From the NCBI RefSeq assembly GCF_046119375.1, contig NW_027362769.1:401884001-401948000 (forward strand): DNA of 64,000 nt, in the 5' to 3' direction. This document shows positions 1,166 through 63,604 of the stretch, in pieces; the stretch's first letter is position 1; every line of letters starts with the position of its first letter. Both the position numbers and the translations under genes were made by a program. Below the pieces are notes generated by a model. It did no database searches and was not told where the DNA came from. It was given only the letters and a program-made list of their open reading frames with translations. The stretch is from Phyllobates terribilis. Taxonomy: Eukaryota.

Positions 1166-1699
1166 ACCCTACGAGTTACTAACAATACGTAAAAGCTCAC
1201 TTTTTATTAAAGTTGATACCTTTTTTTTTTCTGCTTGTGAGTGGAGAGACATGGAGAAGTCGGAGAGCGCAGTGCAGCCCTTGACATCTACATTGCTGCC
1301 TATGAAGAGTGCAGCAGTCGGGAGAAGCTCATCTTCAGCTGGGGATCTTTGCACAGGCAGCGACCTAGATGACAACGCTCACTTCTTCATACTGAGAGCT
1401 TTGTTATCTTGGTGGCTGCCCATGGAGCTGATGACCAACTTATCTTGACTTCTGCGCTCTGTATCCGGAGCTCTGGCACCGACCTAGATATCAGTGCGAC
1501 CCCCTGGCTGCTCTACTTGTATAGAAGCATTTTGCTCTGCTATAGAGTTTGGCACCTTTTTTGCCGTCTCCCCCCATAGTGTGTGCTCCCCAAATACTGT
1601 CCGAGTAATAAAACCCCTGCGCCTTCTGCAACCTGAGAGCCAACAGCAAATCAGCAGAATGCAGAGTGCAGCTCTGGATGTAAAGCAGAATTGTCCTAC

Positions 1700-25619: not shown

Positions 25620-25785
25620 GAGCGCCGCCATCTTTCTACACCCAGATTGCGAGTCACTTCCGTTCCCAACAGGAAATGCCGCCATCTTACCTCACCCAGC
25701 CGCCTCCCGCGCTCCTCAGGACGTCGCCCTGTTTCTACACTCAACTAACGGAAGTGCAAGCTGAACCGGAAGTCGGCCATATTGC
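25620..25785. promoter_or_regulatory. Bidirectional NIF3L1/PPIL3 promoter with YY1 and ETS/GABP motifs
   Basis: CGCCATCTT (YY1) at 25626-25634 and 25680-25688; CACTTCCG at 25655-25662, ACGGAAGTG at 25748-25756 and ACCGGAAGT at 25765-25773 (ETS). The region is CpG-rich and lies between divergent genes. The head-to-head arrangement is also known in mammals. Confidence 0.75.
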
Positions 25786-25872
25786 TACACCCATGAGATG
25801 AGAGAAAGGCGGGGGCGTCCATGTTGGTACACCCGGGAGCGCGGGCTCATTTCTGTCTTTCCCGTAGACACG

Positions 25873-42900: not shown

Positions 42901-45900
42901 AATGTACTGTGGGGACATCATACTGTGTGTGGGGGAATGTACTGTGGGGACATCATACTGTGTGTGTGGGGGAATGTACTGTGGGGACATCATACTGTGT
43001 GTGGTGGGAATGTACTGTGAGGACATCATACTGTGTGTGTGGAGGAATGTACTGTGGGGACATCATACTGTGTGTGGAGAATGTACTGTGGGGACATCAT
43101 ACTGTGTAGAGGGAATGTACTGTGAGGACATCATACTGTGTGTGGGGGAATGTACTGTGGGGACATCATACTGTGTGTGTGGGGGAATGTACTGTGGGGA
43201 CATCATACTGTGTGTGTGGGGGAATGTACTGTGGGGACATCATACTGTGTGTGTGGGGGAATGTACTGTGGGGACATCATACTGTGTGTGTGGGGGAATG
43301 TACTGTGGGGACATCATACTGTGTGTGTGGGGGAATGTACTGTGGGGACATCATACTGTGTGTGGTGGGAATGTACTGTGAGGACATACTGTGTGGGGGA
43401 ATGTACTGTGAGGACATCATACTGTGTGTGTGGAGGAATGTACTGTGGGGACATCATACTGTGTGTGGAGAATGTACTGTGGGGACATCATACTGTGTAG
43501 AGGGAATGTACTGTGAGGACATCATACTGTGTGTGGGGGAATGTACTGTGGGGACATCATACTGTGTGTGTGGGGGAATGTACTGTGGGGACATCATACT
43601 GTGTGTGTGAGGGAATGTACTGTGGGGACATCATACTGTGTGTGTGGGGGAATGTACTGTGAGGACATCATACTGTGTGTGGGGGAATGTACTGTGGGGA
43701 CATCATACTGTGTGTGTGGGGGAATGTACTGTGGGGACATCATACTGTGTGGGGGGGAATGTACTGTGGGGACATCATACTGTGTGTGGGGGGGAATGTA
43801 CTGTGGGGACATCATACTGTGTGGTGGGAATGTACTGTGAGGACATCATACTGTGTGGGGGAATGTACTGTGGGGACATCATACTGTGTGTGGAGGAATG
43901 TACTGTGGGGACATCATACTGTGTGTGGAGGGAATGTACTGTGGGGACATCATACTGTGTGGGGGAATGTACTGTGGGGACATCATACTGTGTGGGGGAA
44001 TGTACTGTGGGGACATCATACTGTGTGTGGGGGGAATGTACTGTGGGGACATCATACTGTGTGTGGGGGAATGTACTGTGAGGACATCATACTGTGTGTG
44101 GGGGAATGTACTGTGAGGACATCATACTGTGTGTAGAGGAATGTACTGTGAGGACATCATACTGTGTGTGGGGGAATGTACTGTGGGGACATCATACTGT
44201 GTGTGGGGGGAATGTACTGTGAGGACATCATACTGTGTGGAGGGAATGTACTGTGAGGACATCATACTGTGTGGAGGGAATGTACTGTGAGGACATCATA
44301 CTGTGTGGGGGGAATGTACTGTGGGGACATCATACTGTGTGTGGAGGAATGTACTGTGAGGACATCATACTGTGTGTAGAGGAATGTACTGTGAGGACAT
44401 CATACTGTGTGTGGGGGGAATGTACTGTGGGGACATCATACTGTGTGTGGGGGGAATGTACTGTGGGGACATCATACTGTGTGTGGGGAATGTACTGTGG
44501 GGACATCATACTGTGTGTGGAGGGAATGTACTGTGGGGACATCATACTGTGTGTGGAGGGAATGTACTGTGGGGACATCATACTGTGTGTGTGGGGAATG
44601 TACTGTGGGGACATCATACTGTGTGTGGGGGAATGTACTGTGGGGACATCATACTGTGTGTGTGGGGGAATGTACTGTGGGGACATCATACTGTGTGTGG
44701 TGGGAATGTACTGTGAGGACATCATACTGTGTGTGTGGAGGAATGTACTGTGGGGACATCATACTGTGTGTGGAGAATGTACTGTGGGGACATCATACTG
44801 TGTAGAGGGAATGTACTGTGAGGACATCATACTGTGTGTGGGGGAATGTACTGTGGGGACATCATACTGTGTGTGTGGGGGAATGTACTGTGGGGACATC
44901 ATACTGTGTGTGTGGGGGAATGTACTGTGGGGACATCATACTGTGTGTGTGGGGGAATGTACTGTGGGGACATCATACTGTGTGTGTGGGGGAATGTACT
45001 GTGGGGACATCATACTGTGTGTGTGGGGGAATGTACTGTGGGGACATCATACTGTGTGTGTGGGGGAATGTACTGTGGGGACATCATACTGTGTGGGGGA
45101 ATGTACTGTGGGGACATCATACTGTGTGTGGGGGGGAATGTACTGTGGGGACATCATACTGTGTGTGGTGGGAATGTACTGTGAGGACATCATACTGTGT
45201 GGGGGAATGTACTGTGGGGACATCATACTGTGTGTGTGGAGAATGTACTGTGGGGACATCATACTGTGTAGAGGGAATGTACTGTGGGGACATCATACTG
45301 TGTGTGGAGAATGTACTGTGGGGACATCATACTGTGTGTGGGGGGAATGTACTGTGAGGACATCATACTGTGTGTGTGGAGGGAATGTACTGTGAGGACA
45401 TCATACTGTGTGGGGGGAATGTACTGTGGGGACATAATACTGTGTGTGGGGGAATGTACTGTGAGGACATCATACTGTGTGTGGGGGAATGTACTGTGAG
45501 GACATCATACTGTGTGGGGGAATGTACTGTGGGGATATCATACTGTGTGTGTGGGGGAATGTATTGTGAGGACATCATACTGTGTGAAAGGCTGTGGGAA
45601 CACATTGGGTAGGTGGGTCATGGATGCATGATACTGTGTGGGCGGCATCAGGGGAGAAATACTTTGGTGATATACTGTGTGTGGGGGGAATGTACTGTGA
45701 GGACATCATACTGTGTGGGGGAATGTACTGTGGGGACATCATACTGTGTGTGTGGGGGAATGTACTGTGAGGACATCATACTGTGTGTGGGGGAATGTAC
45801 TGTGGGGACATCATACTGTGTGTGTGGGGGAATGTACTGTGGGGACATCATACTGTGTGTGGGGGGAATGTACTGTGAGGACATCATACTGTGTGTGTGG

Positions 45901-48900
45901 AGGGAATGTACTGTGAGGACATCATACTGTGTGGGGGGAATATACTGTGGGGACATCATACTGTGTGTGGGGGAATGTACTGTGAGGACATCATACTGTG
46001 TGTGGGGGAATGTACTGTGAGGACATCATACTGTGTGGGGGAATGTACTGTGGGGACATCATACTGTGTGTGGGGGAATGTACTGTGAGGACATCATACT
46101 GTGTGTGGTGGAATGTACTGTGGGGACATCATACTGTGTATGGAGGAATGTATTGTGAGGACATCATACTGTGTGAAAGGCTGTGGGAACACATTGGGTA
46201 GGTGGGTCATGGATGCATGATACTGTGTGGGCGGCCTCAGGGGAGAAATACTTTGGTGATATCATACTGTGTGTGGGGGGAATGTACTGTGAGGACATCA
46301 TACTGTGTGGGGGAATGTACTGTGGGGACATCATACTGTGTGTGTGGGGGAATGTACTGTGAGGACATCATACTGTGTGTGGGGGAATGTACTGTGGGGA
46401 CATCATGCTGTGTGTGTGGGGGAATGTACTGTGGGGACATCATACTGTGTGTGTGGGGGAATGTACTGTGGGGACATCATACTGTGTGGGGGGAATATAC
46501 TGTGGGGACATCATACTGTGTGTGGGGGAATGTACTGTGAGGACATCATACTGTGTGTGGGGGAATGTACTGTGGGGACATCATACTGTGTATGGAGGAA
46601 TGTATTGTGAGGACATCATACTGTGTGAAAGGCTGTGGGAACACATTGGGTAGGTGGGTCATGGATGCATGATACTGTGTGGGCGGCCTCAGGGGAGAAA
46701 TACTTTGGTGATATCATACTGTGTGTGGGGGGAATGTACTGTGGGGACATCATACTGTGTGTGGAGGGAATGTACTATGGGGACATCATACTGTGTGTGG
46801 AGGAATGTACTGTGGAGACATCATACTGTGTGGGGGGAATGTACTGTGGAGACATCATACTGTGTGTGGGGGAATGTACTGTGAGGACATCATACTGTGT
46901 GTGTGGGGAATGTACTGTGGGGACATCATACTGTGTGTGGGGGAATGTACTGTGAGGACATCATACTGTGTGGGGGAATGTACTGTGAGGACATCATACT
47001 GTGTGGGGGAATGTACTGTGGGGACATCATACTGTGTGTGTGGGGGAATGTACTGTGGGGACATCATACTGTGTGTGGTGGGAATGTACTGTGAGGACAT
47101 CATACTGTGTGTGGGGGGAATGTACTGTGGAGACATCATTCTGTATGTGGGGGGAATGTACTGTGAGGACATCATACTGTGTGTGTGGAGGGAATGTACT
47201 GTGAGGACATCATACTGTGTGGGGGGAATATACTGTGGGGACATCATACTGTGTGTGGGGGAATGTACTGTGAGGACATCATACTGTGTGTGGGGGAATG
47301 TACTGTGAGGACATCATACTGTGTGGGGGAATGTACTGTGGGGACATCATACTGTGTGTGTGGGGGAATGTACTGTGAGGACATCATACTGTGTGTGGGG
47401 GAATGTACTGTGGGGACATCATACTGTGTATGGAGGAATGTATTGTGAGGACATCATACTGTGTGAAAGGCTGTGGGAACACATTGGGTAGGTGGGTCAT
47501 GGATGCATGATACTGTGTGGGCGGCCTCAGGGGAGAAATACTTTGGTGATATCATACTGTGTGTGGGGGGAATGTACTGTGGGGACATCATACTGTGTGT
47601 GGAGGGAATGTACTATGGGGACATCATACTGTGTGGGGGGAATGTACTGTGGAGACATCATACTGTGTGTGGGGGAATGTACTGTGAGGACATCATACTG
47701 TGTGTGTGGGGAATGTACTGTGGGGACATCATACTGTGTGTGGGGGAATGTACTGTGAGGACATCATACTGTGTGGGGGAATGTACTGTGGGGACATCAT
47801 ACTGTGTGTGTGGGGGAATGTACTGTGGGGACATCATACTGTGTGTGGTGGGAATGTACTGTGAGGACATCATACTGTGTGTGGGGGGAATGTACTGTGG
47901 AGACATCATACTGTATGTGGGGGGAATGTACTGTGAGGACATCATACTGTGTGTGGGGGAATGTACTGTGAGGACATCATACTGTATGTGGGGGGAATGT
48001 ACTGTGAGGACATCATACTGTGTGGGGGAATGTACTGTGGGGACATCATACTGTGTGTGGGGGAATGTACTGTGGAGACATCATACTGTGTGTGGGGAAT
48101 GTACTGTGAGGACATCATACTGTGTGTGGGGAATGTACTGTGAGGACATCATACTGTGTGTGGGGAATGTACTGTGGGGACATCATACTGTGTGGGGGAA
48201 TGTACTGTGGGGACATCATACTGTGTGTGGGGGGAATGTACTGTGGGGACATCATACTGTGTGTGGGGGAATGTACTGTGAGGACATCATACTGTGTGTA
48301 GAGGAATGTACTGTGAGGACATCATACTGTGTGTGGGGGGAATGTACTGTGGGGACATCATACTGTGTGTGGGGGGAATGTACTGTGGGGACATCATACT
48401 GTGTGTGGGGGGAATGTACTGTGGGGACATCATACTGTGTGTGGGGGGAATGTACTGTGGGGACATCATACTGTGTGTGGGGAATGTACTGTGGGGACAT
48501 CATACTGTGTGTGGGGGAATGTATTGTGAGGACATCATACTGTGTGTGGGGGAATGTACTGTGAGGACATCATACTGTGTGGGGGAATGTACTGTGAGGA
48601 CATCATACTGTGTGGGGGAATGTACTGCGAGGACATCATACTATGTGTGGGGGAATGTACTGTGGGGACATCATACTGTGTGTGGAGGAATGTACTGTGG
48701 GGACATCATACTGTGTATGGGGGAATGTACTGTGAGGACATCATACTGTGTGTGGAGGAATGTACTGTGGGGACATCATACTGTGTGTGGAGGAATGTAC
48801 TGTGAGGACATCATACTGTGTATGGGGGAATGTACTGTGAGGACATTATACTGTGTGTGGAGGAATGTACTGTGAGGACATCATACTGTGTGTGGGGGGA

Positions 48901-51900
48901 ATGTACTGTGGGGGCATCATACTGTGTGTGGGGGAATGTACTGTGAGGACATCATACTGTGTGTGGGGGAATGTACTGTGAGGACATCATACTGTGTGTG
49001 GGGAATGTACTGTGAGGACATCATACTGTGTATGGGGGAATGTACTGTGAGGACCTCATACTGTGTATGGGGGAATGTACTGTGAGGACATCATACTGTG
49101 TATGGGGGAATGTACTGTGGGGACATTATACTGTGTGTGGAGGAATGTACTGTGGGGACATTATACTGTGTGTGGAGGAATGTACTGTGAGGACATCATA
49201 CTGTGTGTGGGGGGAATGTACTGTGGGGGCATCATACTGTGTGTGGGGGAATGTACTGTGAGGACATCATACTGTGTGTGGGGGAATGTATTGTGAGGAC
49301 ATCATACTGTGTGTGGAGGGAATGTACTGTGGAGACATCATACTGTGTGTGGGGGAATGTACTGTGGGGACATCATACTGTGTGTGGGGGAATGTACTGT
49401 GGGGACATCATACTGTGTGTGGGGGAATGTATTGTGAGGACATCATACTGTGTGTGGGGGAATGTACTGTGAGGACATCATACTGTGTGTGGGGGAATGT
49501 ATTGTGAGGACATCATACTGTGTGTGGAGGGAATGTACTGTGGAGACATCATACTGTGTGTGGGGGAATGTACTGTGGGGACATCATACTGTGTGTGGAG
49601 GGAATGTACTGTGGGGACATCATACTGTGTGTGGGGGAATGTACTGTGGGGACATCATACTGTGTGTGGAGGGAATGTACTGTGGAGACATCATACTGTG
49701 TGTGGAGGGAATGTACTGTGGAGACATCATACTGTGTGTGGGGGAATGTACTGTGGGGACATCATACTGTGTGTGGGGTTATGTATTGTGAGGACATCAT
49801 ACTGTGTGTGGAGGGAATGTACTGTGAGGACATCATACTGTGTGTGGGGAATGTACTGTGGGGACATCATACTGTGTGTGGGGAATGTACTATGGGTACA
49901 TCATACTGTGTGTGGGGGAATGTATTGTGAGGACATCATACTGTGTGTGGGGGAATGTACTGTGAGGACATCATACTGTGTGGGGGGAATGTACTGTGGG
50001 GACATCATACTGTGTGTGGAGGAATGTACTGTGAGGACATCATACTGTGTGTGGAGGAATGTACTGTGAGGACATCATACTGTGTGTGGGGGGAATGTAC
50101 TGTGAGGACATCATACTGTGTGTGGGGGGGAATGTACTGTGAGGACATTATACTGTGTGTGGGGGAATGTACTGTGGGGACATTATACTGTGTGTGGGGG
50201 AATGTACTGTGAGGATATCATACTGTGTGTGGAGGAATGTACTGTGGGGACATTATACTGTGTGGGGGAATGTACTGTGAGGACATTATACTGTGTGGGG
50301 AATGTACTGTGGGGACATCATACTGTGTGTGGGGGAATGTACTGTGAGGACATTATACTGTGTGGGGGAATGTACTGTGGGGACATCATACTGTGTGTGG
50401 GGGAATGTACTGTGGGGACATCATACTGTGTGTGGGGGAATGTACTGTGAGGACATCATACTGTGTGGGGAATGTACTGTGAGAACATCATACTGTGTGT
50501 GGGGAATGTACTGTGAGGACATCATACTGTGTATGGGGGAATGTACTGTGAGGACATCATACTGTGTATGGGGGAATGTACTGTGGGGACATTATACTGT
50601 GTGTGGAGGAATGTACTGTGAGGACATCATACTGTGTGTGGGGGGAATGTACTGTGGGGGCATCATACTGTGTGTGGGGGAATGTACTGTGAGGACATCA
50701 TACTGTGTGTGGGGGAATGTACTGTGAGGACATCATACTGTGTGTGGGGAATGTACTGTGAGGACATCATACTGTGTATGGGGGAATGTACTGTGAGGAC
50801 ATCATACTGTGTATGGGGGAATGTACTGTGAGGACATCATACTGTGTATGGGGGAATGTACTGTGGGGACATTATACTGTGTGTGGAGGAATGTACTGTG
50901 GGGACATTATACTGTGTGTGGAGGAATGTACTGTGAGGACATCATACTGTGTGTGGGGGGAATGTACTGTGGGGGCATCATACTGTGTGTGGGGGAATGT
51001 ACTGTGAGGACATCATACTGTGTGTGGGGGAATGTACTGTGAGGACATCATACTGTGTGTGGGGGAATGTACTGTGAGGACATCATACTGTGTGTGGGGG
51101 AATGTACTGTGAGGACATCATACTGTGTGTGGGGGAATGTACTGTGAGGACATCATACTGTGTGTGGAGGAATGTACTGTGAGGACATCATACTGTGTGT
51201 GGGGAATGTACTGTGGGGGCATCATACTGTGTGTGGGGGAATGTACTGTGAGGACATCATACTGTGTGTGGGGGGAATGTAGTGTGGAGACATCATACTG
51301 TGTGTGGAGGAATGTACTGTGGGGACATCATACTGTGTGTGGGGGGAATGTACTGTGGGGGCATCATACTGTGTGTGGAGGAATGTACTGTGAGGACATC
51401 ATACTGTGTGTGGGGAAAGTACTGTGGGGACATCATACTGTGTGGGGGGGGTGTACTGGGGGGACATCATACTGTGTGTGGGGGAATGTACTGTGAGGAC
51501 ATCATACTGTGTGTGGGGCATGTACTGTGGGGACATCATACTGTGTGTGGGGGAATGTACTGTGGGGACATCATACTGTGTGTGGAGGGAATGTACTGTG
51601 GAGACATCATACTGTGTGTGGAGGGAATGTACTGTGGAGACATCATACTGTGTGTGGGGGAATGTACTGTGGGGACATCATACTGTGTGTGGGGTTATGT
51701 ATTGTGAGGACATCATACTGTGTGTGGAGGGAATGTACTGTGAGGACATCATACTGTGTGTGGGGAATGTACTGTGGGGACATCATACTGTGTGTGGGGA
51801 ATGTACTATGGGTACATCATACTGTGTGTGGGGGAATGTATTGTGAGGACATCATACTGTGTGTGGGGGAATGTACTGTGAGGACATCATACTGTGTGGG

Positions 51901-54900
51901 GGGAATGTACTGTGGGGACATCATACTGTGTGTGGAGGAATGTACTGTGAGGACATCATACTGTGTGTGGAGGAATGTACTGTGAGGACATCATACTGTG
52001 TGTGGGGGGAATGTACTGTGAGGACATCATACTGTGTGTGGGGGGGAATGTACTGTGAGGACATCATACTGTGTGTGGGGGAATGTACTGTGGGGACATT
52101 ATACTGTGTGTGGGGGAATGTACTGTGAGGATATCATACTGTGTGTGGAGGAATGTACTGTGGGGACATTATACTGTGTGGGGGAATGTACTGTGAGGAC
52201 ATTATACTGTGTGGGGAATGTACTGTGGGGACATCATACTGTGTGTGGGGGAATGTACTGTGAGGACATTATACTGTGTGGGGGAATGTACTGTGGGGAC
52301 ATCATACTGTGTGTGGGGGAATGTACTGTGAGGACATCATACTGTGTGGGGAATGTACTGTGAGAACATCATACTGTGTGTGGGGAATGTACTGTGAGGA
52401 CATCATACTGTGTATGGGGGAATGTACTGTGAGGACATCATACTGTGTATGGGGGAATGTACTGTGGGGACATTATACTGTGTGTGGAGGAATGTACTGT
52501 GAGGACATCATACTGTGTGTGGGGGGAATGTACTGTGGGGGCATCATACTGTGTGTGGGGGAATGTACTGTGAGGACATCATACTGTGTGTGGGGGAATG
52601 TACTGTGAGGACATCATACTGTGTGTGGGGAATGTACTGTGAGGACATCATACTGTGTATGGGGGAATGTACTGTGAGGACATCATACTGTGTATGGGGG
52701 AATGTACTGTGAGGACATCATACTGTGTATGGGGGAATGTACTGTGGGGACATTATACTGTGTGTGGAGGAATGTACTGTGGGGACATTATACTGTGTGT
52801 GGAGGAATGTACTGTGAGGACATCATACTGTGTGTGGGGGGAATGTACTGTGGGGGCATCATACTGTGTGTGGGGGAATGTACTGTGAGGACATCATACT
52901 GTGTGTGGGGGAATGTACTGTGAGGACATCATACTGTGTGTGGGGGAATGTACTGTGAGGACATCATACTGTGTGTGGGGGAATGTACTGTGAGGACATC
53001 ATACTGTGTGTGGGGGAATGTACTGTGAGGACATCATACTGTGTGTGGAGGAATGTACTGTGAGGACATCATACTGTGTGTGGGGAATGTACTGTGGGGG
53101 CATCATACTGTGTGTGGGGGAATGTACTGTGAGGACATCATACTGTGTGTGGGGGGAATGTAGTGTGGAGACATCATACTGTGTGTGGAGGAATGTACTG
53201 TGGGGACATCATACTGTGTGTGGGGGGAATGTACTGTGGGGGCATCATACTGTGTGTGGAGGAATGTACTGTGAGGACATCATACTGTGTGTGGGGAAAG
53301 TACTGTGGGGACATCATACTGTGTGGGGGGGGTGTACTGGGGGGACATCATACTGTGTGTGGGGGAATGTACTGTGAGGACATCATACTGTGTGTGGGGC
53401 AAGTACTGTGGGGACATCATACTGTGTGGGGGGGGATGTACTGTGAGGACATCATACTGTGTGTGGAGGAATGTACTGTGAGGACATCATACTGTGTGTG
53501 GAGGAATGTACTGTGAGGACATCATACTGTGTGGGGGGGGATGTATTGTGGGGACATCATACCATGTGAGTGTGGGGGAAATGTAGTGTGGGGACATCAT
53601 ACTGTGTGAGTGTGGGGGAAATGTAGTGTGGGGACATCATACTGTGTGAGTGGGGGAAATGTAGTGTGGGGACATCATACTGTGTGTGTGGGGGGGGAAT
53701 ATAGTGTGGGGACATCTTGCTGTGTGTGGGGGGGATGTAGTGTGGGGATATCATACTGTGTGTGGAGGAATGTACTGTGAGGACATCATACTGTGTGTGG
53801 AGGAATGTACTGTGAGGACATCATACTGTGTGGGGGGGGATGTACTGTGGGGACATCATACCATGTGAGTGTGGGGGAAATGTAGTGTGGGGACATCATA
53901 CTGTGTGAGTGTGGGGGAAATGTAGTGTGGGGACATCATACTGTGTGAGTGGGGGAAATGTAGTGTGGGGACATCATACTGTGTGTGTGGGGGGGGGAAT
54001 ATAGTGTGGGGACATCTTGCTGTGTGTGGGGGGGATGTAGTGTGGGGATATCATACTGTGTGTGTGTGGGGGGAATGTAGTATGGAGACATCTTGCTGTG
54101 TGTGGGGGAATATAGTGTGGGGACATCTTGCTGTGCGTGGGGGAATGTAGTGTGGGGACATCTTGCTGTGCGTGGGGGAATGTAGTGTGAGGACATCTTG
54201 CTGTGCGCGGGGGAATGTAGTGGGGGGACATCATACTGTGTGTGTGGGGGAATGTAGTGTGGGGACATTGCTGTGTGTGGGGGAATGTAGTGTGGGGACA
54301 TCTTGCTGTGTGGGGGAATGTAGTGTGGGGACATCTTGCTGTGCGTGGGGGAATGTAGTGTGGGGACATCTTGCTGTGCGCGGGGGAATGTAGTGGGGGA
54401 CATTATACTGTGTGTGTGTGGGGGGAATGTAGTGTGGGGACATCATACTGTGTGGGGGGAATGTAGTGTGGGGACATCAAACTGTGTGGGGGGAATGTAG
54501 TGTGGGGACATCTTGCTGTGTGGGGGAATGTAGTTTGGGGACATCTTGCTGTGCGTGGGGGAATGTAGTGTGGGGAAATCTTGCTGTGCGCGGGGGAATG
54601 TAGTGGGGGGACATTATACTGTGTGTGTGTGGGGGGAATGTAGTGTGGGGACATCATACTGTGTGGGGGGAATGTAGTGTGGGGACATCACCCTGTGGGT
54701 GGGAGGTGGTAAAATGTACTGCTGTGATGGGGCTCTGTGACTTCTAGTTACACATCCTGTACATTGCATTGGCGGTGTAGGATAATGAGTGCAGCCAGTT
54801 CTTTGAGGTTGTACCCAGCAGGAGCCGCTGTGTTCTTGGCTGTAATGTGATTGTATGATCCACGTGTTGTAATAAAACTATTCTTGTTTTCTGTGGGAAC

Positions 54901-55694
54901 TCACCGGTCATAGTTGTACAGCCGCGCAGGAAGGAATTCATCTCAGCTGCATCCTCATGGATCTGTAATCCTCCGCTGTAAATTATAACAATATATAATG
55001 GAATCATAAATCTTAGTAGACTAATCCAAGAGAAAGAGACATTTATGAGGGCCCCTCTAGCAGTGTGATGGTGCCCACCCCCTCCCCCAGGATCCAGTTT
55101 AATATCACATGATTTACCAGTGCACCAACACGGGAACGGTGAGATCTGTGGAGTTAGGTTCCAAATCCGTCTCCTCCACTTTCTCTACCAGGTCTTCATA
55201 TTCAGTGAGTTTTGCCACTGGCTCATCCAGGGGGAGGAAGGTTCCTGAGAAGGAAGGAATTAAGGATGAGGCTGCAGATCTCATTACCACCATTGTAATA
55301 TCCATAGAAGGAAGAACTACAAGACGTAAGAGCGAGGACGTCACCGATCTGGTGGAGTCTGGGACAGGACCTTCTCACCGAGCTGAGCGTAGACTGTGGG
55401 TATTTCCCTGTAGCCCACGTACATCATGCCTCTGTTGTCCGCTATGGTGATGTTGGGGGTGAGCTGGTACGTCTTCCTGACCACGGTGGGCTTATCGCTG
55501 GCGTGCATGACGTATTCTCCTCCCTCCAGGACATACTTACAGGAGTTGATCAGCATTGACTTCCCAGATCCCACCGTGCCAAACAGCTGAAGTAGCACCC
55601 GCCGGTAGCCCTGATTACCGTGCACGCCGCCCTCCAGGCTGAAGTCACGGATATACTTCAACATTTCATCCACGGACATCTGCGGGTTTTGCAT
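33943..55694 (-). CDS. IFI44-like P-loop NTPase/GTPase (no TLDc domain seen), 4 exons, 279 aa
   Basis: Exons (minus): 55379-55694, 55118-55244, 54905-54975, 33943-34268 = 840 nt, phases compatible. Walker A GTVGSGKS (55557-55580) after a hydrophobic strand RVLLQLF; DxxG motif IADNRG; G4-like strand PIIIITRK; C-terminal VLVENY..E....D.AILTFL pattern as in IFI44/IFI44L; basic helical tail. Confidence 0.72.
34470..34850. repeat. ~90-bp tandem repeat (~4.5 copies) of a common frog interspersed satellite
   Basis: TTATCAGTCATT...GAGCTGTGACATC...TTATCTACTGTATATAGAGG recurs about every 90 bp. Confidence 0.85.
35245..35345. repeat. 19-bp tandem repeat (GCGCACACAGTACAGAGAA)x5
   Basis: Direct observation. 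Confidence 0.9.
35398..35500 (+). mobile_element. 5'-truncated SINE tail, same family as 31252-31515
   Basis: TAGATTGTGAGCCCCAATGGGGACAGTGATGATAATGTCTGTAAAGCGCTGTGGAATTAATGGCGCTATATAAG...AATAAATAAA. Confidence 0.7.
35560..54690. repeat. ~19-kb minisatellite, ~35-bp unit (GGGAATGTACTGTGRGGACATCATACTGTGTGTGG), with higher-order structure; intronic in the IFI44-like gene
   Basis: Unit length is 33-37 bp, varying through (GT)n and (G)n slippage. A non-unit module is inserted at 35571, 40442, 45586, 46175, 46627 and 47465. A diverged subtype occurs at 53550-54690. Confidence 0.97.
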
Positions 55695-55724
55695 TTTCTC
55701 AAGACACTTTTTGTAATGAACAAG

Positions 55725-55736
55725 GAAAATGAAAGT
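55725..55736 (+). promoter_or_regulatory. ISRE/IRF-E-like element GAAAATGAAAGT just upstream of the IFI44-like ATG
   Basis: Matches the GAAANNGAAAST consensus, 31-42 nt upstream of the ATG at 55694. It also overlaps the minus-strand polypyrimidine tract, so it may be coincidental. Confidence 0.4.
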
Positions 55737-57893
55737 GTTCAGAGTTCAGGGCGCGGCCGTCGCCTGCGAACATAATCCGTGACGAATAATGAAGGACGCA
55801 CCCACTGCCTGCTGAAGAATACCAGCTCATCATCTGCCGACAACCAGCCTGGATACATGAGAGGTTTTGAGCCGCCCCCCGGTGATCACATCACTGATAT
55901 AATTACATTGTGATAGAAATAATGGAAGAGAGACACAAAACGGGAAACTTGTATTTTTTTTTTTTTGTATGTTTTTAGTAATTTTTTTTTTATTTTTCAT
56001 TGTTATTCAGAGACGAACCAGATCTAGCGCTAGAACCTTTTAATAAACCAAAACCTCTAATAATAACTTCAACTACTTCGGTATGATGCACATTTAGTGC
56101 AGATTATTGATTTCTACTCCTTTCATGGATTTCCTGAAGTTCGCGATGACGTCACCGCGGGATGAAGTGAAGACGGCGGCGGTTATAGATTCTGCTCTAT
56201 TTTTCTTTTTGTACTCAACACCGATCCCTGCAGTATATATGCGGAATAACCTCGTGTGACGGATCAACCCCGTACTCCAAGATTTTGCCACATGGGGGTT
56301 GTCGTAGCGCCTATGTAGCTAATGGGACATAATGTTATAAAGTGGGGTGAATATTGTGGATTACATATTGTTGGACATTCTGTGATGTGACCGAAGCACT
56401 CTTGGCCCCCACCTTCCTGTGCTCACTTAGCAGTGGCAAACAGACAATGTGCTGATTAATGGGTTGTTGCATAACTGCTGTCTGGGAGCCTACTGTGGGG
56501 ATTATTTGGTGAGAACAATGGGTGCTAAAAATAGCCTGTGTGATTCTCTATAAAACCTGCTTGTGAGAATAAAAGTTTACTTCATCTTGGAGACACTGTG
56601 CGATAGTCCTATTTTATATATCCCAGTGTAAGAAAAGCCTTTCCATGTCAGGGGCCTGCAGAAGAAGATTGGACATCTGCGGATGGGGTAACTAGCTCCT
56701 GTCACACCTCGTTACCTACAGAAGGATCCTCCCCGCTCTCCAGCTCAGATGACATGATGCCTTGCTGCACTTCTATGTGGCGGATTGCATGTTACATTGG
56801 TGACAATGACACCTGCACCTGTGTCTAAACCAGCCGGCGACTGGCACTGGGGATAGCGGAGGGATCGTCTGTCCATCAGGGTTTTCATATGTGACTGGAC
56901 ATGGAGGTTTCCTCAACTCATATTGGGCAGGGATTAGAGATGAGCATTTCTATTCAATGCGAGTCAAATGTGTTGAATTTGGACTATAGTAGCCTGTATA
57001 AAAGCAGAGGCAGGGAATGCAGCTGCAGTTTTGTACTAAGTCTTGATAGTGAGAACACATCAGTCCGAAAAAAACAGAACAATCTAGTAAAGATTAATGC
57101 GTTAGGAAAGGAATAATAGAGAATTGATAAGTAGAGAGCGGACAGCGGTGATGAATCACGGTGATTATAGTGCAGTTGCTGCATTTTAGTTACGTTTTTT
57201 TCATTCTTCATGCAGAGGTAATCCAGCAATATTGCTAAAGGGAAAAAAAAATCTCACTGAAAGTCTGCGCACGTCACAAAAGTCTGAACCGTGCGTGTCA
57301 CCTGCTCATTTTGACATACACACTTCCGACACCAATACTTGCCAAAAAGGAATTATCACCACCTAAAACATCGCTTTTTACATTCACGCCCCCTGTATAA
57401 CACTGGCACAGCGGGGTTCTGCCTTTCCCCAAAAGGGATAATTTTTAAAAAGCTTAAACCCCTCTCAGTGCATCGTGTTATCAGACGAGCTGTTAGCACC
57501 GGTCTGCATCCGTTTATCCCGAGCCACATGGAGGTCACGTAGACAATACAAAACCTGTAATTGCGTGAATAATAGGGGTTGGATTGAGGGTGACACGTCT
57601 TCTCCGGGCACAAGGAGGCTTTTTGTAGTATTTGAACTTTATGGCAAATCGATTCCTGTTAAATCAATTGTTTCAAAAAATGCGGCAAAACCGGAGAATT
57701 CCAACATTCTAAAGATTCACTCGTGTAAATCGGAGATGGTTGACCATCGTTGTTCGATGGCCGATGTCTGGTATTTTTAAAAGGTTTCCAATAACAGATA
57801 TATTCTAATCTCTAATTAGTGCGATTCATCCTCATCGGCTTTGGGTACAGACCCATCGTTTATCACCGGCTCCTTCCTTCGTAGATGTTTTCT

Positions 57894-60800
57894 TTATTTC
57901 TCCTCCGTTACTTTCTTCTCATCTCCGGTGAACAGGAACACATCGGTGGCCAACGACTTGAGTTTGGGCTGTTCCTTCAGGATCTCATTCTTCCTCTCTT
58001 CACTACTGTCCTTCAGGTCATCGATCACCACAATCACGTTCTTCTTTTCTGTTTTTTCGGAAACATATTCTCTCGTTAAAACAAAATTACTTATTATAAA
58101 AAAGAGGAGAAAAAAGAATCAAAGGATTAGAGACCAATATTACCGCTATATAAGATTATTAAATACCACCCCACGATGACTACATAATACCATGGTATAG
58201 TAACTGGATAATGCCGTAATACCGATCTTTTAAGGGATTGTCCACCCCTGAATAATATTCAGCAAGCCATGCAGGTTGCTGAATCCCAGTAGTAGGATTC
58301 GGCTCTGCTTGCCGATCCAGCCGGTATGTGAGCAGAGCCGAACCCCAATGGTGTGTGTTCCTCAGACACCGCTAGGATACAGACAGCTGCATTGTTTGCC
58401 TCAACTTCACTCACAGATGTACAATCCTTTTAATAAATATGAATGTACCAATATCGATATTTGCATCAATATTGCCATTAATAAAGAAATAATAGCGCCA
58501 GACAACAACCAGCATATACTATAGTGCTAATACTGATCATTAATCACTGTACTAGGGCTGATATCACCATCATACAGTGACCATATAATGGTAATAGTTC
58601 AGTGCTCTGTACAGATAAATCCAGTGGTGCGCGCTGATCATAGTTATTCACTTTCCCTTTTGTTTTCCATTCGGCCCAGACCACCATGACCACTTCTCCA
58701 CTTCTTCCATCCATAACTCGGCCCAGCAGAATGTACATTGGCTTCCTGCTTTTCCCAGCTGCTATAACCAGTGCCCTACACAGTAATAATGCCATTCTAG
58801 GACCTGCACAGTAATTGTACCCTCCTTTTGTGCCCCACACAATCATAATGTTATTAATTTGGGGATTGATTTATTTTACGTCATTTAGAAGTCCCTCCGG
58901 TTTATTCCGGCCTCAGAGCCGTCTTTGCTTTTAATTTTTCCTCTTCACTATTTTTTTCATGTTCTCATTGTATCAGAGATTGTTTGTTTTTTTTTCTATC
59001 ACAGATTTCATTGTTATCATCACCATTTTGGTGTCTTTATGATCTCTTTTTATTCCATTTTTTGGGAGGCAAAGTACTCTCCAAAAAACAGCAATTCTGA
59101 TGGTTTCCTTTTTATTTATTTTGGCGTTCACTGTATGGGGTGAATATTATGATATTTCATTAGTTTGGCCAATTACGAACGATAGCAAATAAATGGTATT
59201 TGTCCCTCTAGGGTACGTGAACCAGGGGTCACCTGATCGATTGTAATATTGCAGTGGATTATAAAACACCCGACCTCCTGTGGCTCGGCGTCATAGGTGG
59301 CGGACGCAGTAGCCTTCACTAGACCCCTCTCCTGTGCACCTCGGAGGTGTCTCTATGGCTGCCTCCTTGTACCAGTCCATCCTCTCCCACGGTCTCCCAT
59401 CACTATCTCTTACCCAGCTTTGCGAACAGTTCTTTTAGCTCCTCGTCGTACAGAGAGTCTGTGATGTCCGTGAGATTGACTCGTCCTCTGTTCTGGGTAT
59501 GATACAGGATCCCAAAGTCACACCTCGACACGTTCCCCGAAAACTCTGGTAACCCGTTGTTGGAGATGTAATAAGGCCGGACGCTCTTTACAAAGGACTC
59601 AGATTCCAGCATTCTCTTCAGCCAATCATATTCACTCTCCGCTGACCTCGAAAAAATCCCAACTTTTACCTTGTGAAAATAAGAACGTAAAAACCATTGT
59701 AACTGTATAGAAAGTCAATCACTGACTGTATAGAAAGTCAATCACTGACTGCATAGAAAGAAACCCAGTGATTTCTTCTTATTGTCATGGGATCATTGAG
59801 TCTCTGGAAAAACGCTTGCCTAAGGCAAAAATGAAGTAACTAGGGTGTAATAGAAAAACAGACAAAGAAAAAAAACCCAGAATAAAATGTAACTTTTAAA
59901 AGATATTTTAAAAGGCCGACTAATTGGTCACAGAATGGACAAACACCATAAAAATGTCGGTGCAACAAAGGGTAATGATCAGGGGTACGATGAAATAATG
60001 TCATTCAGGCTGGCCCTAGATGTCCCTAAATAAACTAGGACCCTACCTGACAGCGGACGCTTATCACCCTAGCGAGACGGTTTGGTGTCCCCGCTCCACG
60101 TCGGCTGTCCCTTGATTGCCCTATTAGGCCCTCGCACCAGACATACATTAACTAAATATTACTTGGCAAAATTTTTTATCCTATGCAGTGGTACTGCCCA
60201 GGTCACGGCCAGATATCTATACACATGTAATGGGGTGCTAAACATAGTTCAAACTCAATCAAGAGATAAAAACAGAAATAATCAATGATCTCAGAAAAGC
60301 AAATAAACACCTTTTATGATCTGTCATCGGATTATGTGCATTCGCGCCCCACTATACATGTCTGTGTTAGTGGGACCTTATTGTAGGGAGTAACGCCAGT
60401 TTGGGGATTAATTCCTTACCCCACAATGGTAGTTACGTTGTTTGAACGCATTTACGCTCCAGGTTAGGTGGCTAGCTGCGCATTGGTTCGCGCGGGTTGG
60501 GGGCATGACCGGAAGTTACGTGACCGGACGTCTCGTTACTGGAACGCAGCTGCGCTCCACCAGGACGCAGCGGTGACACATCAAGTGTCTCATTGGGCAC
60601 AAGGGTATCACTGCTCTCCTCGGATATGACCTCTAGACTCCTGATTCTAATTGGTGGGTGGATTTTTGGCGCGTGATCACGGCTATATGAATGGGGATGT
60701 CTGCTACAATGTTGAATCAGCCATTTGCTCTGATGGTCCATGGCAGATACACTGATACTGCCGATGCTCCTATTATGGTGTTTCTCCTAATCTGTCCCCT

Positions 60801-63604
60801 GATGAACCCTGAACTAGGAGAAGGTGAAACGCGTTGGCATAGCTGCTGGCATCTATTGTGCCATGATTTTGGGACCTTTTCCTATGCATTGGTGCAACCT
60901 ACAGGATTCTGCCTGAATTGATCTACCCGGTCCTTTTTTGAAAGCAATCTACTACCTAGCTCAGATAAGTTCATTTTTCTCTTATAGTACATATTGCAGT
61001 GTTTATTTGCTTTTCTGAGATCATTGATTATTTCTCTGTTTTTATCTCTTGATTGAGTTTGAACTATATCTAGCACCCATCATATGTGTATAGATATCTG
61101 GCCGTGACCTGGGCAGTACCACTGCATAGGATAAAGAATTTTGCCAAGTAATTTTTAGTTAATGTATGTCTGGTGCGAGGGCCTAATAGGGCAATCAAGG
61201 GACAGCTGACGTGGAGCGATGACACCAAACGTCTCGCTAGGGTGATAAACGTCCGCTGTCAGGTAGGGTCCTAGTTCATTTAGGGACATCTAGGGCCAGC
61301 CTGAATGACATTATTTCATCGTACCCCTGATCATTACCCTTTGTTGCACCGACATTTTTATGGTGTTTGTCCATTCTGTGACCAATTAGTCGGTCTTTTA
61401 AAATATCTATTAAAAGTTACATTTTACTCTGGGGTTTTTTCTTTGTCTGTTGATCATTGAGTCTCTTCCTTAAAGGTGTGAAAAATGTCATGGTAGATTT
61501 TCTAAATGGGCTAAAGTCAGGAGTGGACACCACAAGGATCTGTACTGGGAGCAGTGGAGACACCAAGGATTTGTGCTGGGAGCAGAGAAGACCAGAATGA
61601 TCTGTACTGGGAGCAGAGGAGACCACAGGGATCTGTACTGGAAGCAGATGAGACCACAAGGATCTGTACTGGGAGCAGAGGAGACCACAGGGATCTGTAC
61701 TGGGAGCAGAGGAGACCACAGGGATCTGTACTGGAAGCAGATGAGACCACAAGGATCTGAACTGGGAATAGATGAGACCACAAGGATCTGAACTGGGAAC
61801 AGATGAGACCATAAGGATCTGTGCTGGGAGCAGAAAAGACCAGAATGATCTCTACTGGGAGCAGAGGAGACCAGAATGATCTCTACTGGGAGCAGAGGAG
61901 ACCATAAGGATCTCTACTGGGAGTAGAAGAGACCAGAATAATCTGTACTGGGAACAGAGGAGACCACAGGGATATTTACTGGGAACAGATGAGACCACAA
62001 GGATCTGTACTGGGAGCAGAAGAGACCATAAGGATCTCTACTGGGTGCAGAGGAGACCATAAGGATCTCTACAGGGTGCAGAGGAGACCAGAAGGATCTC
62101 TACTGGGAGCAGAGGAGATCAGAAGGATCTCTACTGGGAGCAGAGGAGATCAGAAGGATCTCTACTGGGAGCAGAGGAGACCAGAAGGATCTCTACTGGG
62201 AGCAGAGGAGACCATAAGGATCTCTACTGGGAGCAGAGGAGACCATAAGGATCTCTACTGGGAGCAGAGGAGACCATAAGGATCTCTACTGGGAGCAGAG
62301 GAAACCATAAGGATCTCTACTGGGAGCAGAGGAGACCATAAGGATCTGTACTGGGAGTAGATGAGACCACAAGGATCTGTACTGGGAGTAGGGGAGACCA
62401 CAAGGATCTGAACTGGCAGCAGATGAGACCACAAGGATCTGTACTGGGAGCAGATGAGACCACAAGGATCTGTACTCGGAGCAGGGGAGACCAGAATGAT
62501 CTGTTCTGGGAGCAGATGAGACCATAGGGATCTGTACTGGGAGCAGATGAGACCACAAGGATCTGTACTGGCAGCAGATGAGACCACAAGGATCTGTACT
62601 GGGAGTAGAGGAGACTACAAGGATCTGTACTGGGAGCAGAGGAGACCTCAGGGATCTGTACTGGGAGCAGATGAGACCACAAGGATCTGTACTGGCAGCA
62701 GATGAGACCACAAGGATCTGTACTGGGAGTAGAGGAGACTACAAGGATCTGTACTGGGAGCAGAGGAGACCACAGGGATCTGTACTGGGAGTAGAGGAGA
62801 CTACAAGGATATGTACTGGGAGCAGAGGAGACCACAAGGATCTGTACTGGGAGCAGAGGAGACCACAAGGATCTGTACTGGGAGCAGAGGAGAGCACAGG
62901 GATCTGTACTGGGAGCAGATGAGACCACAGGGATCTGTACTGGGAGCAGAGGAGACCACAAGGATCTGTACTGGGAGCGGAGGAGACCACAAGGATCTGT
63001 ACTGGGAGCGTAGGAGACCACAAGGATCTGTACTGGGAGCAGAGGAGACCACAAGGATCTGTACTGGGAGCGTAGGAGACCACAAGGATCTGTACTGGGA
63101 GCAGAGGAGACCACAGGGATCTGTACTGGGAGCAGAGGAGACCACAGGGATCTGTACTGGGAGTAGAGGAGACTACAAGGATCTCTATGGGATTTAGTTC
63201 TGGCTCTACATTCTTAAAATTATATAGACTAGCAGGAGAAGGTTTGAGTTATGGTGGTAGAAGACAGGAGAGTGACCATAGGGGGTGCAGAGGGACACTT
63301 ACACCTGGACCCCGATACCTGAAGCCCCTTAAGAAGACACTCTTATTACAGATGGTAGGATGGGGCCCTTGTATAGATTTTACTCCGGGGCCCGGATTTA
63401 GATTGTGCTTCTATGGGAGGAAAATAATGAACTTCTCCACTTACCGGCCTGGGAGGTTTCCCTGAAAAATAGAACAAAAGAAGATTTCAGTAACTTTAAT
63501 ATTGAGCTGGAGAGAAAGTAAGAAAAGACGATTACTTTTCATTGTTCTTCGCATCTGACACATTTTTTCTTCAAATGAAGAACTTTTTCCGTGACTAAAT
63601 TCAC
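57894..63604 (-). CDS. Uncharacterised amphibian-type protein with a TIR-like (Rossmann-fold) domain; 5' end may lie beyond the window
   Basis: Exons (minus): 63536-63604 (phase 1-1), 63445-63461 (17-nt microexon, 1-0), 59414-59669 (0-1), 57894-58048 (1-stop). Translation: ...MRRTMKRKPPRP-VKVGIFSRSAESEYDWLKRMLESESFVKSVRPYYISNNGLPEFSGNVSRCDFGILYHTQNRGRVNLTDITDSLYDEELKELFAKL-EKKNVIVVIDDLKDSSEERKNEILKEQPKLKSLATDVFLFTGDEKKVTEEK*. All junctions are GT-AG and in frame. Confidence 0.7.
59806..61451. mobile_element. Penelope-like (PLE) non-autonomous insertion with ~450-bp inverted arms and a 15-bp target-site duplication
   Basis: Arms 59857-60310 and 60999-61451 are near-identical reverse complements. 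Direct repeat GATCATTGAGTCTCT lies at 59791-59805 and 61452-61466. There is a hammerhead motif in the spacer. Confidence 0.7.
60797..60837 (+). ncRNA. Minimal type I hammerhead ribozyme motif (PLE type)
   Basis: CC-CTGATGA (60799-60805)-ACC/loop/GGT (stem II)-GAAA (60826-60829)-CGCGT-T-GG. Palindromic ACGCGT stem III, predicted GUU cleavage after 60835, 2-bp stem I. Confidence 0.65.
61520..63190. repeat. 31-bp minisatellite (GAGACCACAAGGATCTGTACTGGGAGCAGAG)n
   Basis: Direct periodicity. Intronic in the TIR-like gene. Confidence 0.95.

What the first reader, a model, noticed from the sequence alone, without database searches (positions are those of the whole stretch)
55379..59669. TIR-like gene and IFI44-like GTPase in tandem with phase-matched splice sites: possible TIR-NTPase immune module
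Seen: the second TIR exon has an internal phase-0 donor AAA|GTAACG at 57911, six codons before its stop. The same GTAACG donor is used by NIF3L1 at 15781. The first NTPase exon has a phase-0 acceptor at 55707-55708 that adds CLEK in frame ahead of its ATG. Splicing 57912 to 55706 would give one TIR-like + P-loop protein. Reading through the donor gives a TIR-only protein whose stop overlaps an AATAAA (GAAATAAAG, 57893-57898). Established: TIR fused to a P-loop NTPase is a recurring immune architecture (plant TNLs, bacterial TIR-STAND), and IFI44 proteins are interferon-induced. Inference: this is an alternatively processed or co-regulated sensor-effector pair, not one I recognise as described in vertebrates.
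Basis: partly seen in the sequence, partly recalled or inferred. Interest (0 to 1): 0.78.

Follow-up and report, generated by a model that had tools for sequence, protein, structure and literature searches.

The report
Linked frog TIR-like and GTPase genes
Two neighbouring, unnamed genes of the golden poison frog (a small TIR/flavodoxin-like protein and a 279-residue GTPase) are made as separate proteins, not spliced together as proposed, but the same pair sits side by side in other frogs and is fused into one protein in two Australian frogs, so the two probably work together.

Summary
The window is Phyllobates terribilis. RefSeq already models both genes as separate "uncharacterized proteins": a TIR-like gene with four isoforms that share one stop, and a 279-aa NTPase.

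The proposed 57912>55706 splice has no support.
- Spliced RNA contigs from 4 runs (2 studies) show only the junctions inside each gene.
- The 2.2-kb spacer is covered unspliced.
- The donor (AAA|GTAACG) is weak. It exists in phase 0 only because of a 1-nt difference from Dendrobates tinctorius, where the same hexamer holds the stop codon.
- The acceptor is not conserved either.

The broader idea of a linked pair does get independent support.
- The same TIR-like > NTPase order and strand is found in D. tinctorius and in the hylid Dendropsophus.
- In Mixophyes fleayi one exon encodes the end of the TIR-like domain and the start of a homologous NTPase. Pseudophryne also has a fused protein.

Fold assignments:
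- The NTPase is a TRAFAC GTPase fold (closest GIMAP, Toc and IRG). It has no TLDc domain and no Pfam family. "IFI44-like" could not be tested.
- The first domain is a confident five-strand alpha/beta fold. TIR ranks first but ties with GTPase and receiver (REC) folds, and no TIR profile matches.

An earlier scan note covers the same frog domain family on other DNA.

The parts
63535..63602 (-). Upstream coding exon of the TIR-like gene (...EFSHGKSSSFEEKMCQMRRTMK). The 5' boundary was not determined, and the start codons lie further upstream or outside the window.
   Evidence: tblastn of P0153 gives 100% identity.
63445..63460 (-). 16-nt micro-exon of the TIR-like gene (encodes RKPPRP).
   Evidence: The loose end at 59670 in all four runs reads ...RTMKRKPPRP. 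The exact string is located.
59414..59669 (-). Exon encoding the N-terminal two thirds of the TIR/flavodoxin-like domain (VKVGIFSRS...FAKL).
   Evidence: joint 58048>59414.
57894..58048 (-). Last coding exon of the TIR-like gene (EKKNVIVVIDD...GDEKKVTEEK), with stop TAA at 57896-57894.
57906..57911 (-). It is weak, no RNA contig uses it, and in D. tinctorius the same hexamer holds the stop codon (AAG TAA CGG).
57893..57898 (-). AATAAA overlapping the stop. It is conserved in D. tinctorius.
55709..57892 (-). Spacer between the two ORFs. RNA contigs cover it without splicing. It is partly conserved with D. tinctorius. 56255-56775 is absent from D. tinctorius, and contigs branch at its edges.
   Evidence: tables 2, 7, 8.
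55707..55708 (-). No contig uses it. D. tinctorius has a different AG a few bases upstream; Dendropsophus has none.
55725..55736 (+). ISRE/IRF-E-like motif GAAAATGAAAGT, about 30 nt upstream of the NTPase ATG. It is the only match in the window and is conserved in D. tinctorius and Dendropsophus. It could also be the pyrimidine tract of an old acceptor.
   Evidence: 1 match, 0.05 expected.
55379..55694 (-). NTPase coding exon 1: the start codon, Walker A (GTVGSGKS) and DNRG (DxxG).
55118..55244 (-). NTPase exon 2.
   Evidence: Joints 55243>55378 and 54975>55118 in all four runs.
54905..54975 (-). NTPase exon 3.
   Evidence: joint, and the loose end at 54903.
35700..54770 (.). A 35-bp satellite array of about 19 kb, lying inside NTPase intron 3. 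Its edges are approximate.
33943..34268 (-). NTPase exon 4 (last): LSPIIIITRKN...SR plus the stop.
   Evidence: The loose end of exon 3 continues into this exon. The reconstructed protein is identical to RefSeq P0229.

Best explanation
These are two separate, expressed genes of Phyllobates terribilis on the minus strand.

Gene 1 makes a protein of 229-270 aa. Its C-terminal 140 residues are one copy of a domain family found across frogs, with a five-strand parallel alpha/beta fold of the TIR/flavodoxin type. Gene 2 makes a 279-aa TRAFAC-class GTPase with an intact Walker A motif, a DxxG motif and a long C-terminal helix. Its third intron holds a 19-kb satellite.

In this frog the two ORFs are not joined by splicing.

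The genes do form an old linked pair: same order and strand in dendrobatids and a hylid, and one fused ORF in myobatrachid frogs.

Inference: they act together in one pathway, most likely innate immunity. The GTPase would be the nucleotide-controlled switch or assembly unit, and the TIR-like domain the partner or effector. The transcribed spacer and an ISRE-like motif in front of the GTPase ATG are consistent with joint, possibly interferon-driven, expression. The function itself is not shown.
For: - Identity: P0021 (XP_073505027.1) matches the exon at 100%. Isoforms X1-X4 all end ...GDEKKVTEEK.
- My four-exon reconstruction of the NTPase equals RefSeq P0229 exactly.
- RNA: the joints 58048>59414, 55243>55378 and 54975>55118 are present in all 4 runs and no other joint is listed. 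Contigs cover 58048 down to 55378 without splicing. For example, X6 contig 21 holds the TIR-like exons plus sequence down to 56255, and X5 contig 13 runs from 56699 to 55378 plus the spliced NTPase exons.
- Comparison of the donor: P. terribilis has AAG AAA GTA ACG ... TAA, D. tinctorius has AAG AAG TAA CGG.
- Synteny: in D. tinctorius (L003) the TIR-like exons lie at 4564-6417 and the NTPase starts at 10001. In Dendropsophus (L004) they lie at 480-3767 and the NTPase starts at 10001. Same strand in both.
- Fusion: Mixophyes P0155 (589 aa) is collinear with the window. One exon, L001 55030-55275, encodes ...FLFSHEEKTSEYISYCKSFLEGNK...IKIR. Pseudophryne P0120 (596 aa) carries both domains.
- Folds: the TIR-like model has pLDDT 95.4. 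The NTPase model has pLDDT 86.4. GIMAP, IRG and Arl13B are the top Foldseek hits at E about 1e-5. All 50 top VIA rows are GTPases, Z 10.6-12.6.
- The ISRE-like motif is unique in the window and conserved.
Against: - Contigs drop rare isoforms, so a minor fused transcript is not excluded. The tissues and conditions of the runs are unknown.
- Tiling contigs do not prove single molecules across the spacer. The contig graph branches at 56990-57023, 56670-56699 and 56255.
- The fused myobatrachid NTPases are distant (22-24% identity), form their own long branch, and have degenerate Walker A motifs. They are paralogues rather than orthologues.
- A Mantella homologue and an Engystomops TIR-like gene show no partner within 10 kb.
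- There is no expression, induction or interaction data.
Confidence: 0.7

Rival explanations
1. One reading: an alternative 57912>55706 splice yields a single TIR-like plus GTPase protein in P. terribilis, perhaps only in infected or interferon-treated tissue.
For: The join is in frame. The hypothetical junction GDEKK|CLEK... resembles the natural Mixophyes junction ...HEEKTSEYISYCKSF..., and the tblastn alignment starts exactly at CLEK/CKSF. The spacer is present in RNA, so a precursor exists.
Against: No such joint appears in 4 runs from 2 studies. No RefSeq isoform has it. The donor is weak, lacking the -1 G and the +5 G. Its phase is specific to this species, and the acceptor is not conserved.
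Confidence: 0.05
2. The two ORFs share a read-through (conjoined) transcript. Some TIR-like mRNAs skip the AATAAA at the stop, run through the spacer and carry the spliced GTPase exons. This would couple the expression of the two proteins without fusing them.
For: Contigs containing spliced GTPase exons extend 600-1000 nt upstream of the ATG (X1 contig 1, X5 contig 13). Contigs containing the TIR-like exons extend at least 1.1-1.6 kb past the stop (X2 contig 9, X6 contig 21). Their ends overlap by k-1.
Against: A contig across two genes does not show a single transcript. In X2 and X6 the GTPase contig stops at 55747/55749 and the next contig starts at 55764, and the depths differ tenfold in X2 (69.7 against 7.2). 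That fits a separate start site near 55750. A second ORF 2.2 kb downstream would be poorly translated from such an mRNA.
Confidence: 0.3
3. The adjacency carries no functional meaning. Both genes belong to fast-evolving, locally clustered frog gene families, and the myobatrachid fusion is an independent exon-shuffling event.
For: The TIR-like domain is promiscuous: it is found with kinesin motors, URGCP GTPase, Ig and FIIND-CARD. Other family members have no partner within 10 kb. The fused NTPases are a separate long branch.
Against: The same order, strand and close spacing are kept between Dendrobatidae and Hylidae. The same two domain families were also joined in one exon in another lineage.
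Confidence: 0.25

Closest known systems
TIR domains (for example plant RPS4/RRS1 TIR, bacterial TIR-STING, SIGIRR, TIRAP)
   Same: Five-strand parallel alpha/beta sandwich of about 140 residues. TIR structures rank first in both fold searches: 9lmq at E 2.4e-4 in Foldseek, and 4c6t at Z 9.3 over 123 residues. A Glu conserved in 84% of members opens the helix after strand 3. UniRef's automatic name for a Ranitomeya member is 'TIR domain-containing protein'.
   Different: None of 101 family members matched any Pfam TIR model, even at E up to 5. The TIR structural hits tie, within 1 Z unit, with GTPase, deoxyribosyltransferase and receiver (REC) domains. The most conserved residues here are S14, W23, C57, Y63-H64, G69, Y81 and D102-D103. 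From memory, these are not the classic TIR box motifs.
GIMAP/AIG1, Toc and IRG immune GTPases (TRAFAC class)
   Same: GTPase fold. GIMAP2, GIMAP7, GIMAP5, Irgb10 and Arl13B are the top Foldseek hits, and Toc33 aligns over 195 residues at Z 12.5. G1 is GTVGSGKS and G3 is DNRG. The G4 position is a T-R/N-K-x strand end, which resembles the GIMAP 'TRKxD' from memory. A long C-terminal helix follows the G domain.
   Different: No Pfam GTPase family reaches its threshold; the best are MMR_HSR1 at 7e-4 and IIGP at 0.03, each in single members. The Asp of NKxD/TKxD is missing (TRKN), so guanine specificity is uncertain.
IFI44 / IFI44L
   Same: From memory only: a P-loop GTPase-like region of comparable size and interferon-regulated expression. 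An ISRE-like motif precedes the ATG here.
   Different: There is no TLDc domain, and the protein is only 279 aa. No IFI44 sequence or model was available in the tools, so homology was not tested. RefSeq does not name any member IFI44-like.
Plant TNLs and bacterial TIR-STAND (Avs-type) proteins
   Same: A TIR-type fold combined with a P-loop NTPase. In Mixophyes and Pseudophryne both are on one chain.
   Different: The NTPase here is a TRAFAC GTPase, not a STAND/AAA+ NB-ARC or NACHT domain. No repeat sensor domain is present. In P. terribilis the two are separate proteins.

Membership tests
TIR domain | Flavodoxin-like five-strand parallel alpha/beta fold. | tested here: met
   The AF2 model has pLDDT 95.4 and a b-a-b-a-b-a-b-a-b-a order. 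TIR structures are the top hits in Foldseek and VIA, but they tie with other folds.
TIR domain | Significant match to a TIR sequence profile (PF01582, PF13676 and relatives). | tested here: not met
   0 of 101 members matched any TIR model among the listed families at E up to 5. The PDB profile search also found no TIR.
TIR domain | Catalytic Glu in helix C and a BB-loop, as in the NADase TIRs. | tested here: inconclusive
   E84 of the domain is conserved in 84% of 101 copies at the start of helix 82-92. No residue-level superposition on a TIR NADase was possible.
IFI44 family | N-terminal TLDc domain. | tested here: not met
   No TLDc hit in P0229 or in any of 13 homologues. The protein starts about 30 residues before the P-loop.
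IFI44 family | Sequence homology of the GTPase region to IFI44. | not testable with these tools
IFI44 family | Induction by interferon. | not tested
   Only a conserved ISRE-like motif at 55725-55736 bears on this.
TRAFAC GTPases (GIMAP/Toc/IRG-like) | GTPase fold. | tested here: met
   Foldseek finds GIMAP, IRG and Arl13B at E about 1e-5. All 50 top VIA rows are GTPases, Z 10.6-12.6.
TRAFAC GTPases (GIMAP/Toc/IRG-like) | G1 GxxxxGK[ST] and G3 DxxG. | tested here: met
   GTVGSGKS and DNRG are present in P0229 and in most standalone homologues. In the fused forms G1 is degenerate: GSTESGRS and GFQKSDGS.
TRAFAC GTPases (GIMAP/Toc/IRG-like) | G4 [NT]KxD. | tested here: not met
   TRKN, TNKT or THEL stand at the aligned position, with no Asp.
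TIR-NTPase single-chain immune receptors (TNL, TIR-STAND) | Both domains on one polypeptide, with a STAND NTPase. | tested here: not met
   They are separate proteins in P. terribilis, and the NTPase is a TRAFAC GTPase. The two domains are fused only in Mixophyes and Pseudophryne.

The most novel reading that the evidence does not exclude
Frogs carry an undescribed two-component innate-immune module: a TIR-type domain, possibly nucleotide-processing, paired with a GIMAP-like GTPase. The two are encoded as neighbours in hyloid frogs and as one chain in myobatrachids. This would be a vertebrate counterpart of the TIR-plus-NTPase logic of plant and bacterial immunity.
Probability: 0.3. Interest if true: 0.75.

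Novelty: new variant of a known kind. Interest (0 to 1): 0.5.

Why it matters
A fold that looks like TIR, joined to or sitting next to a P-loop switch, is a recurring theme of plant and bacterial immunity. It has not been described in this form in vertebrates.

The comparative result is new: the pair is syntenic across frog families and naturally fused in two species. That gives a concrete, testable reason to study two large frog gene families, found here only in frogs, that currently have no name, no Pfam model and no literature. Amphibian innate immunity is also of practical interest because of chytrid and ranavirus declines.

Tried and rejected
- Pfam on single exons and on whole proteins gave nothing for either domain.
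- A word-based search with the Mixophyes NTPase part alone found only itself. It worked only after window exons were added to the alignment.
- The look-up of encoding contigs failed for P0021 and P0048, which are not the longest isoforms. It gave no DNA for the P. terribilis paralogue or for the two Pseudophryne genes. So I could not test whether the paralogous pair in P. terribilis is also adjacent, or whether the Pseudophryne fusion lies in one exon.
- The PDB sequence-profile searches gave only sub-threshold P-loop matches. They also gave a caspase-3 p12 match at E 0.04, which I regard as chance.
- I first read the precomputed PF07693 and PF13191 flags on family members as fusions to KAP or AAA_16 NTPases. 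I rejected this. The isolated 140-aa domains themselves give those weak hits. The likely cause is the VIVVIDDL strand, which looks like a Walker B motif. In addition, P0171 consists of four such domains, which leaves little room for a KAP domain.
- Two literature searches found no description of either family.
Full report
**1. What is in the sequence**

All features lie on the minus strand.
- AAA|GTAACG, with GT at 57911-57910.
- Five further codons (VTEEK), then TAA at 57896-57894.
- AATAAA at 57898-57893, overlapping the stop.
- AG at 55708-55707, followed in frame by CLEK and the ATG at 55694.

The window has no N.

**2. Whose genes these are**

A search of 1.84 billion representative proteins with the 86-residue exon gave 360 hits at E up to 0.001. 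One is a 100% match, P0021.

P0021 is XP_073505027.1, an "uncharacterized protein" of Phyllobates terribilis. It has isoforms X1-X4 of 270, 269, 230 and 229 aa. All end ...FLFTGDEKKVTEEK.

The coding exons of this gene inside the window are:
- about 63602-63535;
- a 16-nt micro-exon at 63460-63445;
- 59669-59414;
- 58048-57894.

**3. The NTPase gene**

RNA joints and a loose end, together with the sequence, give four coding exons:
- 55694-55379
- 55244-55118
- 54975-54905
- 34268-33943

Intron 3 holds a 35-bp satellite of about 19 kb.

The translation is 279 aa. It is identical to RefSeq protein P0229, another "uncharacterized protein [Phyllobates terribilis]". So both genes are already modelled, and as separate genes.

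**4. RNA evidence on the proposed splice**

The eight public runs that hold the stretch come from two studies of one organism. The four I laid contain spliced contigs, so they are RNA or contain RNA.

All four runs show 58048>59414, 55243>55378 and 54975>55118, each with GT..AG ends on the minus strand. No other joint is listed, and in particular not 57912>55706.

Instead, contigs cover the spacer without splicing:
- X6 contig 21 joins both TIR-like exons to continuous sequence down to 56255.
- X2 contig 9 does the same down to 56670.
- X5 contig 13 runs from 56699 to 55378 and then through the spliced NTPase exons.
- X1 contig 1 does the same from 56290.

Caveats:
- Contigs drop rare forms.
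- A contig across two genes does not prove a single molecule.
- The graph branches at 56990-57023, 56670-56699 and 56255.
- In X2 and X6 the NTPase contig ends at 55747/55749 and the next contig starts at 55764. Depths there are 7.2 against 69.7 in X2. That would fit a separate start site.

**5. Comparative evidence on the splice sites**

| Species | Sequence at the end of the TIR-like ORF |
|---|---|
| P. terribilis | AAG AAA GTA ACG GAG GAG AAA TAA |
| D. tinctorius | AAG AAG TAA CGG AGG AGA AAT AAA |
| Engystomops | AAG AAG TAG |
| Dendropsophus | ...GAC AAG TAA |

In D. tinctorius the sequence is one base shorter, so the same GTAACG holds the stop codon. The phase-0 "donor" of P. terribilis is therefore a side effect of a 1-nt difference beside the stop.

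The donor also lacks the -1 G and the +5 G. The AATAAA is conserved between the two dendrobatids.

Upstream of the NTPase ATG, D. tinctorius has TTCAG|TACAAAGTG. RefSeq uses that AG with a small exon about 100 nt upstream (P0230). P. terribilis has TTCATTACAAAAAG|TG. Dendropsophus has no AG there.

**6. The pair is nevertheless old**

- In D. tinctorius (L003) the TIR-like exons lie at 4564-4827 and 6295-6417, and the NTPase starts at 10001 on the same strand. A cyclophilin gene lies beyond it, as in the window.
- In the hylid Dendropsophus ebraccatus (L004) the TIR-like exons lie at 480-752 and 3630-3767, and the NTPase starts at 10001.
- About 1.6 kb of the spacer aligns between the two dendrobatids. 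Against Dendropsophus, only the exons and about 60 nt before the ATG align.

**7. Natural fusions**

Mixophyes fleayi XP_075034878.1 (P0155, 589 aa) has two TIR-like domains followed by a homologue of the NTPase.

It is collinear with the window by tblastn:

| P0155 residues | Window coordinates |
|---|---|
| 173-256 | 59663-59409 |
| 249-297 | 58067-57915 |
| 305-391 | 55706-55506 |
| 499-585 | 34275-34003 |

The full P. terribilis NTPase aligns to P0155 residues 309-585 at 22% identity, pairwise E 5e-10.

In the Mixophyes genome a single exon (L001 55030-55275) encodes GREKVIVVIDD...FLFSHEEKTSEYISYCKSFLEGNK...IKIR. The fusion therefore does not depend on a predicted splice between two genes.

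Pseudophryne corroboree P0120 (596 aa) has the same two parts.

Both fused NTPases have degenerate Walker A motifs, GSTESGRS and GFQKSDGS. In a 12-sequence tree (P0234, a 199-aa short isoform, was left out) they form a separate long branch with 100/100 support. They are paralogues rather than orthologues. The tree is unrooted, so I cannot say whether fusion or separation came first.

Pseudophryne also has a standalone homologue, P0235. A Mantella homologue has no TIR-like partner within 10 kb. An Engystomops TIR-like gene has no detectable NTPase within 10 kb.

**8. What the domains are**

TIR-like domain:
- With 101 diverse copies, AlphaFold gives pLDDT 95.4 and a b-a-b-a-b-a-b-a-b-a pattern.
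- Foldseek ranks TIR-STING first (E 2.4e-4, TM 0.51). CheB REC, SIGIRR TIR, MilB and flavodoxin follow closely.
- VIA-align ranks the RPS4/RRS1 TIR first (Z 9.3, 123 residues). It ties with GTPase domains, deoxyribosyltransferases and REC domains at Z 8-9.2.
- No Pfam TIR model matches any of the 101 copies. Instead, a few copies give weak KAP_NTPase, AAA_16 or NB-ARC hits, presumably through the Walker-B-like VIVVIDDL strand.
- The best-conserved residues are S14, W23, C57, Y63-H64, G69, Y81, D102-D103 and Q119. The putative catalytic Glu (E84) is kept in 84% of copies.
- The named hits run from Ascaphus to dendrobatids, and none comes from a non-frog organism. The domain occurs with kinesin motors, URGCP GTPase, Ig and FIIND-CARD.
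- An earlier scan report on another gene of this family reached the same "TIR/CheY-like, membership unproven" view.

NTPase:
- With 13 homologues, pLDDT is 86.4.
- The top Foldseek hits are Arl13B, GIMAP2/7/5/1/4 and Irgb10/Irgb6/IIGP1, at E 1e-5 to 1e-4.
- All 50 top VIA rows are GTPases, Z 10.6-12.6. Toc33 and a septin give the longest alignments.
- Motifs: G1 GTVGSGKS, a conserved Thr, G3 DNRG, but TRKN where NKxD would stand.
- Pfam gives only sub-threshold MMR_HSR1, RsgA and IIGP hits, and no TLDc.
- "IFI44-like" therefore remains an untested recollection.

**9. Regulatory hint**

GAAAATGAAAGT at 55725-55736 is the only ISRE/IRF-E-type match in 64 kb, against 0.05 expected. It lies about 30 nt before the NTPase ATG. 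D. tinctorius has GAAAGTGAAAGC and Dendropsophus has GAAAGTGAAAGT at the same place.

The motif could equally be the pyrimidine tract of an old acceptor. In D. tinctorius it lies in a short annotated intron.

**10. Verdict**

- The proposed fusion splice is not supported.
- The idea of a linked TIR-like/GTPase pair is supported by synteny and by natural fusion in other frogs.
- Function is inferred, not shown.

Noticed in passing
window 35700-54770: A 35-bp satellite of about 19 kb (about 89% matches between copies) fills most of NTPase intron 3. The intron is still removed correctly in RNA: exon 3 joins exon 4 at 34268.
   Followed up: partly
window 55725-55736: An ISRE/IRF-E-like motif about 30 nt upstream of the NTPase ATG. 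It is unique in the window and conserved in D. tinctorius and Dendropsophus. It may instead be an old acceptor's pyrimidine tract.
   Followed up: partly
window 63445-63460: A 16-nt micro-exon (RKPPRP) in the TIR-like gene, seen as a loose end in all four RNA runs.
   Followed up: yes
window 59840-61460 and 61525-63192: The large intron of the TIR-like gene holds two things. One is an element with inverted copies of the same ORF-like end, at 59840-60004 (-) and 61305-61460 (+). The other is a 31-bp tandem array of 54 copies.
   Followed up: no
window 57928-57957 (run X1): In run X1 only, the contig graph breaks inside the last TIR-like exon. Depth is 729 upstream and 116 downstream. The cause is unknown; it could be k-mers shared with a paralogue or an unlisted isoform.
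   Followed up: no
window 59670-59671: Two alternative upstream continuations appear in all runs. One is this gene's (RTMKRKPPRP). The other is from the 94%-identical paralogue P0025/P0154 (RSMRRRLPNQ), so both paralogues are expressed.
   Followed up: partly
window 56255-56775 and 56990-57023: A 520-nt stretch is absent from D. tinctorius, and a 33-nt stretch has several alternative flanks in RNA. Both are probably repeat or transposon fragments inside the transcribed spacer.
   Followed up: no
L003 6709-8280 (D. tinctorius): A 523-aa single-exon ORF is annotated in the D. tinctorius spacer, in a stretch absent from P. terribilis. It is probably a transposon ORF.
   Followed up: no
P0155 and P0120 (Mixophyes, Pseudophryne): The NTPase parts of the fused proteins have lost the Walker A Lys/Ser pattern. 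They may be pseudo-GTPases.
   Followed up: partly
alignment A2 (TIR-like domains): Isolated domains give weak Pfam hits to KAP_NTPase, AAA_16, NB-ARC and nSTAND5. A PDB profile search gives caspase-3 p12 at E 0.04. Precomputed PF07693/PF13191 flags on family members are probably such weak hits rather than real NTPase domains.
   Followed up: partly
window 25785-27500: A cyclophilin (PPIL3-like) gene on the + strand, with proline/arginine-rich repeat ORFs around it. A Pro_isomerase gene sits in the matching position in D. tinctorius.
   Followed up: no
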